From the NCBI RefSeq assembly GCF_006345805.1, contig NC_042998.1, positions 207,204,001 through 207,268,000 of the forward strand: 64,000 nucleotides of DNA, read 5' to 3'. Source of the DNA: Octopus sinensis (lineage: Eukaryota). Of the stretch, positions 40,014-40,891 are shown one piece after another (the first letter of the stretch is position 1; each line of letters starts with the position of its first letter). Under the pieces are notes generated by a model. The model had not been told where the DNA came from. It searched no databases and saw only the letters and a list, made by a program, of their open reading frames with translations. The position numbers were made by a program, and so were the translations under genes.

Positions 40014-40124
40014 CTTCGGGTATATCACATTTTTAAATTCTTCACAAGAAATTCCACAAATGTATCGCAGTTCTTTGACCTTTGTCCTCCGATCGCAATT
40101 TTTGGAACCAGAAATTGATTCCAT
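40014..40124 (-). CDS. TYW5: TYW5 exon 1 (37 codons)
   Basis: MESISGSKNCDRRTKVKELRYICGISCEEFKNVIYPK|gtacca aligns to human (R)LEGVSREQFMQHLYPQ. There is an in-frame stop upstream and no earlier in-frame ATG; phase 0 fits exon 2. Confidence 0.85.
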
Positions 40125-40408
40125 CCCGAAACCAGAAATGCTTTCAGTATCTACACGGGTGTCAGGCCGGAATAGTCCCCCTTCGTATTTTATACCGGGA
40201 ACCTGAGGTTTAATTGATCTTTACACACCGTGCAAATAAATATTATAATTTGTAATTTGTATTTCGATAATTACTTCAGGTGATAAATATTAATAAAAGG
40301 TGTATTTTAATTTTCTGTTGATTAAAGAACGAGAACTGAACGACGGTATCTGTATAAAAGTCAGCCGTCAAGCGGTGCAAAACCTTGTTCCACCATCAAA
40401 CCGTAAGC
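40125..40408. promoter_or_regulatory. Bidirectional promoter region TYW5/MAIP1
   Basis: 284 bp between divergent ATGs; TATAAAA on minus (40188-40194) and plus (40353-40359) with an AT-rich core between them. Confidence 0.7.
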
Positions 40409-40891
40409 ATGGCAGCTTCAGGGCTGAGATATGTCCTTAATTACCACAAAAACTGTCTTTCCACCGCTTCGAACGTTATTCTTTCAATGTCCTTGCTTTC
40501 TAGGAAATACCTTCAAGCCAACAGGGTTAAGCTGATCCGGTTTTTGACCTTTCCGCATGCCCTGGTTAAAAGAAACCCAAGACCTTTGCCTCGACCTCTA
40601 CAGGTTCACGCTTCACACAATCATTATTGCAAGCAATTTCATTCTTCAACACATTCTTCTTTAATTCTCTCCAAGCAGCGAAATGCTGCCGTGGCCCGAC
40701 TTGGAACTCTTTTACACAGATCTTATCACGATGACAAATCGGATAAACCTTGTTTGAAATTAATGGATTTTCCTGAAATAATTTGGCCGAGTCCGATAAA
40801 ATCCTTCCGAAATTGGTGGTTTTCCAAATTAATTCAAGGATATTACGATCACAGCTTTTCCATAGATTCTTTCCTAACTGGCTCAGAACAG
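40409..40891 (+). CDS. MAIP1: m-AAA protease-interacting protein 1 (C2orf47), exon 1 (161 codons)
   Basis: Basic, acid-poor presequence-like N-terminus, then FRNWWFSKLIQGYYDHSFSIDSFLTGSEQ|gtgtgt, matching human LIWAYFDKEFSITEFSEGAKQ. Confidence 0.85.

What the first reader, a model, noticed from the sequence alone, without database searches (positions are those of the whole stretch)
40014..40891. TYW5-MAIP1 head-to-head gene pair apparently conserved between octopus and human
Start codons are 284 bp apart and divergent. Human TYW5 (C2orf60) and MAIP1 (C2orf47) are likewise a head-to-head pair at 2q33. Retention since the protostome-deuterostome split, in a heavily rearranged coleoid genome and with TE-filled introns on both sides, implies strong constraint on a shared promoter linking a tRNA-Phe hydroxylase to a mitochondrial m-AAA/MCU-EMRE assembly factor. 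I do not know whether this has been reported.
Basis: partly seen in the sequence, partly recalled or inferred. Interest (0 to 1): 0.85.

Follow-up and report, generated by a model that had tools for sequence, protein, structure and literature searches.

The report
Conserved TYW5–MAIP1 head-to-head gene pair
Two unrelated housekeeping-type genes, a tRNA-modifying hydroxylase (TYW5) and a mitochondrial assembly factor (MAIP1), start 284 bases apart and point away from each other in octopus as they do in vertebrates, which makes this a real but ordinary example of the several hundred ancient neighbour-gene pairs already known in animals.

Summary
A TYW5 orthologue lies on the minus strand (ATG at 40124) and a MAIP1 orthologue on the plus strand (ATG at 40409). 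They are divergent, and 284 bp separate the two start codons.

Both gene identities hold:
- The TYW5 model (7 exons, 337 aa) matches human TYW5 at E 1e-127.
- MAIP1 is single-copy, has a Tim44-like fold, and matches Xenopus MAIP1 at E 7e-26.

The same tight divergent pair is present in Argonauta, a chiton, two gastropods and the nemertean Lineus, with ATG-to-ATG gaps of 100–1313 bp. It was not found within 10 kb in a bivalve, a second nemertean, or four arthropods. In those insects and that nemertean MAIP1 sits head-to-head with other genes.

The human arrangement is documented. Davila Lopez et al. 2010, Table S5, lists C2orf60/C2orf47 as a divergent, overlapping pair in six vertebrates.

The pair is therefore most likely ancestral to bilaterians. 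The vertebrate half was already catalogued, and the class is well known. Nothing here shows a functional link between the two genes. No promoter sequence is conserved across phyla. A very small breakage target plus protection of two core promoters explains the retention equally well. Deuterostome invertebrates and cnidarians could not be checked.

The parts
40014..40124 (-). TYW5 coding exon 1 (37 aa, ATG at 40124)
   Evidence: It starts at the first in-frame ATG after a stop, and a GT donor follows 40014.
34415..34569 (-). TYW5 exon 2
   Evidence: tblastn hit collinear with human TYW5, with AG/GT boundaries.
33994..34063 (-). TYW5 exon 3
   Evidence: Same evidence as exon 2.
32596..32778 (-). 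TYW5 exon 4 (ends with the THYD iron-ligand motif, H171/D173)
   Evidence: The alignment to 3AL5 is.
29558..29645 (-). TYW5 exon 5
   Evidence: Cupin_8 exon hit, confirmed in the gene model.
25340..25456 (-). TYW5 exon 6
   Evidence: Cupin_8 exon hit at 27.9 bits, confirmed in the gene model.
17185..17474 (-). TYW5 exon 7, with the third iron ligand H246 and the TGA stop
   Evidence: 62% identical to the human C-terminal 85 aa. Model.
40125..40408 (.). 284-bp spacer between the two start codons; presumed divergent promoter region
   Evidence: No repeats; CpG o/e 1.31 against 0.52 for the window. The part from 40175 to 40408 aligns with Argonauta, whereas introns align only at repeat families.
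40188..40194 (-). TATA-like box (TATAAAA), beginning 70 bp upstream of the TYW5 ATG
   Evidence: The aligned Argonauta position reads AATAAAA. Its function is inferred, not shown.
40353..40359 (+). TATA-like box (TATAAAA), beginning 56 bp upstream of the MAIP1 ATG
   Evidence: The aligned Argonauta position has an identical TATAAAA. Its function is inferred, not shown.
40409..40891 (+). MAIP1 coding exon 1 (161 aa: long basic presequence plus the start of the conserved domain)
   Evidence: 100% identical to Octopus sinensis LOC115232575. There is no acidic residue in the first 107 aa.
44675..44746 (+). MAIP1 exon 2
   Evidence: 100% tblastn match with AG/GT boundaries.
54907..55036 (+). MAIP1 exon 3. 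Exons 4 and 5 lie beyond the window, at window-equivalent 68383-68526 and 70574-70732.
   Evidence: for exon 3. for the two downstream exons at C2:207272383-207272526 and C2:207274574-207274732.

Best explanation
The locus holds two single-copy genes transcribed away from each other across a 284-bp spacer.
- TYW5 (minus strand) is a JmjC Fe(II)/2-oxoglutarate hydroxylase that hydroxylates the wybutosine base of tRNA-Phe.
- MAIP1 (plus strand) is a Tim44-like mitochondrial matrix protein that works with the m-AAA protease.

The spacer is repeat-free and not CpG-depleted. It carries an outward-facing TATA-like box in front of each gene. These features suggest two back-to-back core promoters (inferred).

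The arrangement is inherited. It dates at least from the common ancestor of molluscs and nemerteans. Taken with the published vertebrate arrangement, it most probably dates from the bilaterian ancestor. It was lost in arthropods and some other lines.

The most likely reason for its persistence is mechanical rather than functional. To separate the genes without harming either, a break must fall inside a few hundred bases that contain both promoters. Such breaks are rare, and most are selected against. No functional coupling between tRNA-Phe modification and mitochondrial proteostasis is needed.
For: **Shown**
- The TYW5 model has 7 GT-AG exons and 337 aa.
- Its best solved-structure relative is human TYW5/C2orf60 (3AL5): E 1.3e-127, 429 bits, ungapped over 304 aa. 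The next best hit is JMJD5 at 81 bits.
- It scores 151 bits against Pfam Cupin_8. The iron ligands H171/D173/H246 are conserved.
- TYW1 and TYW3 domains are present elsewhere in the genome.
- The MAIP1 exons match Octopus sinensis LOC115232575 and map to a single locus.
- Its homologues are named MAIP1 in molluscs, nemerteans, insects, a hemichordate and Xenopus. It is 31% identical to Xenopus MAIP1 over 179 aa, E 7e-26.
- The predicted fold best matches mL45 and the Tim44 C-terminal domain.
- The divergent pair is present, with ATG-to-ATG gaps of 259 bp (Argonauta), 311 bp (Liolophura), 360 bp (Patella), 1313 bp (Gigantopelta) and 100 bp (Lineus). The upstream neighbours were confirmed as TYW5.
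- In vertebrates the pair is divergent and overlapping in human, mouse, chicken and three fishes.
- The vertebrate flanking genes are on other octopus chromosomes.
- MAIP1 pairs head-to-head with other genes where TYW5 is not adjacent.

**Inferred**
- The promoter roles of the two TATA-like boxes.
- The small-target explanation for persistence.
Against: - No transcription start sites or expression data were available. A shared promoter, or two separate ones, is not demonstrated.
- The small-target argument was not tested quantitatively.
- Amphioxus, echinoderms, hemichordates, annelids and cnidarians were not examined. A bilaterian origin therefore rests on two clades plus the improbability of convergence.
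- 'Absent' means no TYW5 exon and no annotated TYW5 within 10 kb upstream of MAIP1. A looser linkage cannot be excluded in Solemya, Tachypleus or Schistocerca.
- TATAAAA occurs 31 times in the window, so two copies in the spacer are only suggestive.
Confidence: 0.75

Rival explanations
1. The pair is held together by selection for co-regulation from a truly shared bidirectional promoter, because tRNA-Phe hydroxywybutosine synthesis and mitochondrial m-AAA/MCU-EMRE assembly need coordinated expression.
For: - The pair survives with very short gaps in six lophotrochozoans and six vertebrates, while the flanking genes are scrambled.
- The spacer aligns between Octopus and Argonauta although unique intron sequence does not.
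- Conserved 5'-5' pairs as a class show raised co-expression (Irimia 2012).
Against: - No k-mer of 9 or more bases is shared by four or more of the six spacers.
- Spacer composition ranges from 25% to 57% GC.
- MAIP1 functions next to RpL19, CRTC or a ZNF318-like gene in flies, a damselfly and Tubulanus.
- No paper in the library links the two functions or describes a shared promoter.
- From my own knowledge, not checked here: Drosophila and Bombyx lack wybutosine altogether yet keep MAIP1.
Confidence: 0.15
2. Convergence: the two genes became divergent neighbours independently in lophotrochozoans and in vertebrates.
For: - The pair was not seen in any arthropod examined.
- It is not listed for Ciona, Caenorhabditis, Daphnia, Nematostella or Trichoplax in the 2010 catalogue.
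Against: - With about 20,000-30,000 genes, the chance that one named gene becomes the immediate divergent neighbour of another is of the order of 1 in 50,000 per lineage (my estimate).
- TYW5 is probably absent from many ecdysozoans, and the 2010 assemblies and clustering were crude. Those absences are therefore weak evidence.
Confidence: 0.04
3. Artefact: one of the two genes is mis-identified (a paralogue or pseudogene), or the short exon 1 of TYW5 is not the real start, so the 284-bp figure has no meaning.
For: - TYW5 exon 1 is short and poorly conserved.
- No transcript data were available.
- Untranslated upstream exons cannot be excluded.
Against: - Both proteins are full-length and open, with canonical splice sites.
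- MAIP1 maps to one locus only.
- TYW5 is 5-fold closer in score to human TYW5 than to any other JmjC protein.
- Independent NCBI annotations place the two start codons 100-360 bp apart in four other species.
Confidence: 0.03

Closest known systems
Human/vertebrate TYW5 (C2orf60) - MAIP1 (C2orf47) divergent pair at 2q33.1, listed as a potential bidirectional promoter pair in Davila Lopez et al. 2010, PLoS One 5:e10654, Table S5 row 203
   Same: It involves the same two orthologues in the same 5'-5' orientation with very short or negative spacing.
   Different: - The catalogue covered no lophotrochozoan and found the pair only in six vertebrates.
- In octopus the start codons are 284 bp apart.
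- The spacer is AT-rich (37% GC) rather than a classical GC-rich island.
- The vertebrate flanking genes C2orf69 and SPATS2L are on other chromosomes.
Conserved ancestral microsyntenic pairs (CAMPs) of Irimia et al. 2012, Genome Res 22:2356; textbook example HSPD1-HSPE1
   Same: These are non-paralogous neighbours kept across phyla. Most are 5'-5', and a subset has spacers under 1 kb that are taken as bidirectional promoters.
   Different: - I could not check whether TYW5-MAIP1 is in their list, because the supplement is not held.
- HSPD1 and HSPE1 are functionally linked and co-expressed. No such link is known for TYW5 and MAIP1.
TYW5 family (JmjC tRNA-yW hydroxylase; PDB 3AL5/3AL6)
   Same: The octopus protein aligns without gaps over 304 residues, keeps the HxD...H iron ligands, and belongs to Pfam Cupin_8.
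   Different: The N-terminal 21 and C-terminal 12 residues are not alignable. Activity was not tested.
MAIP1 / C2orf47 family (Tim44-like; insect 'juvenile hormone esterase binding protein')
   Same: - The conserved C-terminal 190 residues match.
- The protein has a predicted Tim44/mL45-like fold.
- It has a basic N-terminal presequence.
- It is single-copy.
   Different: - The Pfam Tim44 score is 25.9 bits, below the 29.6-bit cut-off.
- NCBI still labels the octopus protein 'uncharacterized'.
- It is only about 31% identical to vertebrate MAIP1.

Membership tests
TYW5 (tRNA wybutosine-synthesizing protein 5) | JmjC/cupin domain | tested here: met
   Pfam Cupin_8 at 150.9 bits (cut-off 27.4) and JmjC_2 at 38.2 bits.
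TYW5 (tRNA wybutosine-synthesizing protein 5) | Closer to TYW5 than to any other JmjC protein | tested here: met
   The protein scores 429 bits against human TYW5 (3AL5) and 81 bits against JMJD5, the next best hit.
TYW5 (tRNA wybutosine-synthesizing protein 5) | Fe(II) ligands HxD...H | tested here: met
   THYD at 170-173 and WFHN at 244-247 align with the human ligands. Equating them with human H160/D162/H235 uses the tag offset of the PDB chain and my memory of the published numbering.
TYW5 (tRNA wybutosine-synthesizing protein 5) | Substrate pathway present (TYW1-TYW4 make the wybutosine precursor) | tested here: met
   TYW1 (Wyosine_form) hits at 78.6 and 74.4 bits, and TYW3 hits up to 61.3 bits, elsewhere in the genome. 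TYW2 and TYW4 were not searched.
TYW5 (tRNA wybutosine-synthesizing protein 5) | Hydroxylates yW-72 on tRNA-Phe | not testable with these tools
   This needs biochemistry or tRNA mass spectrometry.
MAIP1 (m-AAA protease-interacting protein 1) | Sequence homology to vertebrate MAIP1 across the conserved domain | tested here: met
   Against Xenopus tropicalis MAIP1, BLASTP gives 31% identity over 179 aa, E 7e-26, and the library-wide E-value is 6.9e-17.
MAIP1 (m-AAA protease-interacting protein 1) | Tim44-like domain | tested here: inconclusive
   By sequence, the Pfam Tim44 score is 25.9 bits, below the 29.6-bit cut-off. By fold, the best PDB matches are mL45 (E 6.7e-5, TM about 0.35-0.48) and the yeast Tim44 C-terminal domain. 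The model's mean pLDDT is 83-98 per 10-residue block across residues 111-300.
MAIP1 (m-AAA protease-interacting protein 1) | Single orthologue, no paralogue that could be confused with it | tested here: met
   All five exon hits lie at one locus on C2.
MAIP1 (m-AAA protease-interacting protein 1) | Mitochondrial targeting and interaction with the m-AAA protease | not testable with these tools
   The only indirect evidence is that the first 107 residues contain no acidic residue and 16 Arg/Lys.
Conserved ancestral 5'-5' gene pair / bidirectional promoter pair | Immediate neighbours, divergent, in two or more distant lineages | tested here: met
   Six lophotrochozoans were examined here (and the window). 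Six vertebrates come from the literature.
Conserved ancestral 5'-5' gene pair / bidirectional promoter pair | Spacer under 1 kb | tested here: met
   ATG-to-ATG gaps are 100-360 bp in five of six lophotrochozoans and 1313 bp in Gigantopelta. In human the distance is '<0'. These are measured between coding starts, not transcription starts.
Conserved ancestral 5'-5' gene pair / bidirectional promoter pair | Shared regulatory element or co-expression | not tested
   No expression data were available. No motif is shared among the spacers. Conservation is seen only between Octopus and Argonauta.

The most novel reading that the evidence does not exclude
TYW5-MAIP1 is a bilaterian-old, actively selected co-expression unit. 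A common promoter would couple cytosolic tRNA-Phe hypermodification (reading-frame maintenance) to mitochondrial inner-membrane protein quality control. Its break-up in ecdysozoans would then follow from loss of the wybutosine pathway.
Probability: 0.1. Interest if true: 0.55.

Novelty: new member of a known kind. Interest (0 to 1): 0.3.

Why it matters
- It extends a vertebrate divergent pair, catalogued in 2010, to molluscs and a nemertean. That pushes its likely age back to the bilaterian ancestor.
- It supplies a clean test case from a heavily rearranged cephalopod genome. The case bears on an open question: are very tight head-to-head pairs kept by selection for co-regulation, or simply because they are hard to break?
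- It lets two proteins labelled 'uncharacterized' in NCBI (Octopus sinensis and Argonauta hians LOC115232575) be named MAIP1.
- It does not reveal a new kind of system.

Tried and rejected
- **Pfam Tim44 against the genome in six frames** gave no hit in the window. The exons are too short and divergent, so the gene was identified through its full-length protein instead.
- **Exon 1 peptides alone against Pfam** gave nothing.
- **Xenopus MAIP1 against the octopus genome, exon by exon,** gave nothing useful. Protein-to-protein comparison worked.
- **The profile search meant to reach deuterostomes** listed only protostomes and used the last search of that kind. As a result, no deuterostome or cnidarian MAIP1 was eligible for a neighbourhood look-up.
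- **Pomacea** was not on record.
- **The Irimia 2012 supplement** is not held.
- **Five literature searches** for a description of the pair as head-to-head or bidirectional found none in main texts. The evidence came from a supplement.
- **A motif search across the six spacers** returned only AT-rich k-mers.
- **Pfam on six long intronic or flanking reading frames** gave no family.
- **A PDB search of the 8105-8671 reading frame** gave only low-complexity matches.
The resulting model was then validated independently against PDB 3AL5.

Full report
**Where the window comes from.** The window is G000:C2:207204001-207268000 of a 2.72-Gb assembly in 13,516 contigs. The plus-strand protein is 100% identical to NCBI 'uncharacterized protein LOC115232575 [Octopus sinensis]'. 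The organism is therefore Octopus sinensis.

**Checking the observation.** On the minus strand, the first ATG of an open frame is at 40124. It opens a 37-codon exon (MESISGSK...NVIYPK) that ends at a GT donor after 40014. On the plus strand, the first ATG after an in-frame stop is at 40409. It opens a 161-codon exon that ends at a GT donor after 40891.

**The minus-strand gene is TYW5.** A genome-wide Cupin_8 search gave two minus-strand exon hits in the window. A tblastn probe found six further collinear minus-strand exons downstream of exon 1. Joining the seven exons at canonical AG/GT sites gives an open 337-aa protein spanning 40124 to 17185.
- Against all PDB sequences, its best match is human TYW5 ('JmjC domain-containing protein C2orf60', 3AL5/3AL6): E 1.3e-127, 429 bits, ungapped over 304 residues.
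- The next family, JMJD5, scores 81 bits.
- Pfam Cupin_8 scores 151 bits.
- The iron-binding HxD...H residues are present at H171/D173/H246.
- TYW1 and TYW3 domains occur elsewhere in the genome, so the substrate pathway exists.

**The plus-strand gene is MAIP1.**
- The NCBI protein (303 aa) maps to exon 1 (40409-40891), exon 2 (44675-44746), exon 3 (54907-55036) and two exons beyond the window. It maps nowhere else in the genome.
- Its homologues are named 'm-AAA protease-interacting protein 1, mitochondrial(-like)' in a chiton, gastropods, nemerteans and many insects. They are named 'C2orf47 homolog' in Drosophila.
- An exhaustive search of 1.84 billion representatives gave 552 hits. These include Xenopus tropicalis MAIP1 and a hemichordate MAIP1-like protein (names).
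- Identity to Xenopus MAIP1 is 31% over 179 aa (E 7e-26). Identity to the hemichordate protein is 30% over 215 aa.
- The Pfam Tim44 match is just below threshold: 25.9 bits against a 29.6-bit cut-off.
- An AlphaFold model has 10-residue-block mean pLDDT of 83-98 across residues 111-300. Its best PDB fold matches are mitoribosomal mL45 and the Tim44 C-terminal domain. That is the fold expected of this family.
- The first 107 residues have no acidic residue and 16 Arg/Lys, which fits a mitochondrial presequence.

**Is the arrangement shared?** I anchored on MAIP1 proteins from other genomes and read the called genes within 10 kb. The reported ranges run from ATG to stop.
- A divergent Cupin_8 gene lies immediately upstream in five species. 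The ATG-to-ATG gaps are 259 bp in Argonauta hians, 311 bp in the chiton Liolophura, 360 bp in Patella vulgata, 1313 bp in Gigantopelta aegis and 100 bp in the nemertean Lineus longissimus.
- tblastn with the octopus TYW5 gives 51-93% identical collinear exons in all five loci.
- The Lineus and Liolophura neighbours hit human TYW5 far above any other JmjC protein.
- No TYW5 exon and no such gene call was found upstream of MAIP1 in six species. These are the bivalve Solemya, the nemertean Tubulanus (where a ZNF318-like gene sits head-to-head), the horseshoe crab Tachypleus, Schistocerca, Drosophila mauritiana (RpL19 head-to-head) and the damselfly Hetaerina (CRTC head-to-head).

**The vertebrate side.**
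- The tools hold no deuterostome neighbourhoods that I could reach.
- Main-text literature gives only the gene order SATB2-C2orf69-TYW5-MAIP1-SPATS2L in mammals and duck.
- The decisive source is a supplement. Davila Lopez et al. 2010, Table S5 ('Potential bidirectional promoters'), row 203, lists C2orf60 and C2orf47 as divergently transcribed with intergenic distance '<0'. The pair is recorded in human, mouse, chicken, Fugu, stickleback and Tetraodon.
- That study contained no lophotrochozoan. It does not list the pair for Ciona, nematodes, insects, Daphnia, Nematostella or Trichoplax.
- In octopus, the C2orf69 and SPATS2-like homologues lie on contigs C28 and C21, not on C2. Only the tight pair survived, not the wider block.

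**The spacer itself.**
- About 40% of the window consists of sequence repeated within the window. This covers 42-45% of both genes' introns and 0% of exons and spacer.
- CpG observed/expected is 1.31 in the spacer and 0.96 in the surrounding kilobase, against 0.52 for the window. This would fit an unmethylated promoter (my inference).
- Each gene has a TATAAAA facing it. One begins 56 bp upstream of the MAIP1 ATG and is identical in Argonauta. The other begins 70 bp upstream of the TYW5 ATG and reads AATAAAA in Argonauta. The motif is common in this AT-rich DNA (31 copies in the window), so this is only suggestive.
- Between Octopus and Argonauta, the spacer from 40175 onward aligns as part of a 756-bp match. 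Introns align only at shared repeat families.
- Across the six lophotrochozoan spacers, nothing longer than AT-rich 8-mers is shared. GC content ranges from 25% to 57%.

**Interpretation.**
- The chance that one named gene is the immediate divergent neighbour of another in a shuffled genome is of the order of 1 in 50,000 (my estimate). Sharing between lophotrochozoans and vertebrates therefore points to inheritance from the bilaterian ancestor, with losses in arthropods and elsewhere.
- This does not show selection for co-regulation. A spacer of 100-360 bp that carries both core promoters is a minute target, and a break there is usually harmful. Passive persistence is therefore expected.
- MAIP1 lives head-to-head with unrelated partners in other lineages.
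- No promoter sequence is conserved across phyla.
- No functional link between the two proteins is reported in the library.
- Conserved 5'-5' pairs are a well-described class. Irimia et al. 2012 report 795 conserved microsyntenic groups, and 54.8% of human conserved pairs are 5'-5'.

**Verdict.** Conservation is real and probably bilaterian in age. However, the vertebrate pair was already catalogued, the phenomenon is of a known kind, and the proposed functional constraint is unproven. The main gap is the missing survey of deuterostome invertebrates, annelids and cnidarians.

Noticed in passing
window 8105-8671 (-): A 188-codon open frame with poly-Gly and poly-His tracts (…MADNEESLGVVGGGGHG…HHHHHQHHHHH…ALIVTGLDTAIFEDID…) lies about 9 kb beyond the 3' end of TYW5. 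It looks like a coding exon of an unidentified gene. It has no Pfam family and only low-complexity PDB matches.
   Followed up: partly
window 19509-20574: A trinucleotide microsatellite about 1 kb long sits inside TYW5 intron 6. It is open in all six frames as poly-Ser, poly-Asp, poly-His, poly-Ile and poly-Met runs.
   Followed up: no
window, e.g. 25592-25922, 29793-30024, 44770-45086, 54203-54452, 56468-56720: A short interspersed repeat family has 20-26 copies within the 64-kb window, in the introns of both genes. Related copies fill the introns of the Argonauta locus L007. A tandemly reiterated version lies at 3489-4225.
   Followed up: partly
window 36125-37273 (+); L007 25443-26183: Two adjacent long open frames in TYW5 intron 1 have no Pfam family. 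The region 36824-37594 aligns at 56% identity with DNA downstream of Argonauta MAIP1. It may be a shared transposon-derived family.
   Followed up: partly
window 39620-39700: A CpG-rich patch (GC 0.52, CpG o/e 1.65) lies in TYW5 intron 1, about 350 bp inside the gene. It could be part of the promoter-proximal unmethylated region or a small element.
   Followed up: no
L011 8708-10915; L012 1-11967; L008 1-20639: Where TYW5 is not the neighbour, MAIP1 is still head-to-head with another gene at short range: RpL19 at 373 bp in Drosophila mauritiana, CRTC at 221 bp in Hetaerina, and a ZNF318-like gene at 666 bp in Tubulanus. MAIP1 seems prone to divergent pairing in general.
   Followed up: partly
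L010 58929-68835; L012 14229-21967: In both Schistocerca and Hetaerina, the gene convergent with the 3' end of MAIP1 encodes an Ig plus Peptidase_C14 (paracaspase-like) protein. This may be a second conserved neighbour relation within insects.
   Followed up: no
G000 C28:8243624-8244253 and C21:24080487-24087962: The octopus homologues of C2orf69 and SPATS2L, which flank TYW5-MAIP1 in vertebrates, lie on other chromosomes. The C2orf69 homologue appears intronless over the matched 260 residues.
   Followed up: partly
P0003, P0005 (NCBI LOC115232575 in Octopus sinensis and Argonauta hians): Both proteins are labelled 'uncharacterized protein' in NCBI, although they are clear MAIP1 orthologues. 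This is an annotation gap.
   Followed up: yes
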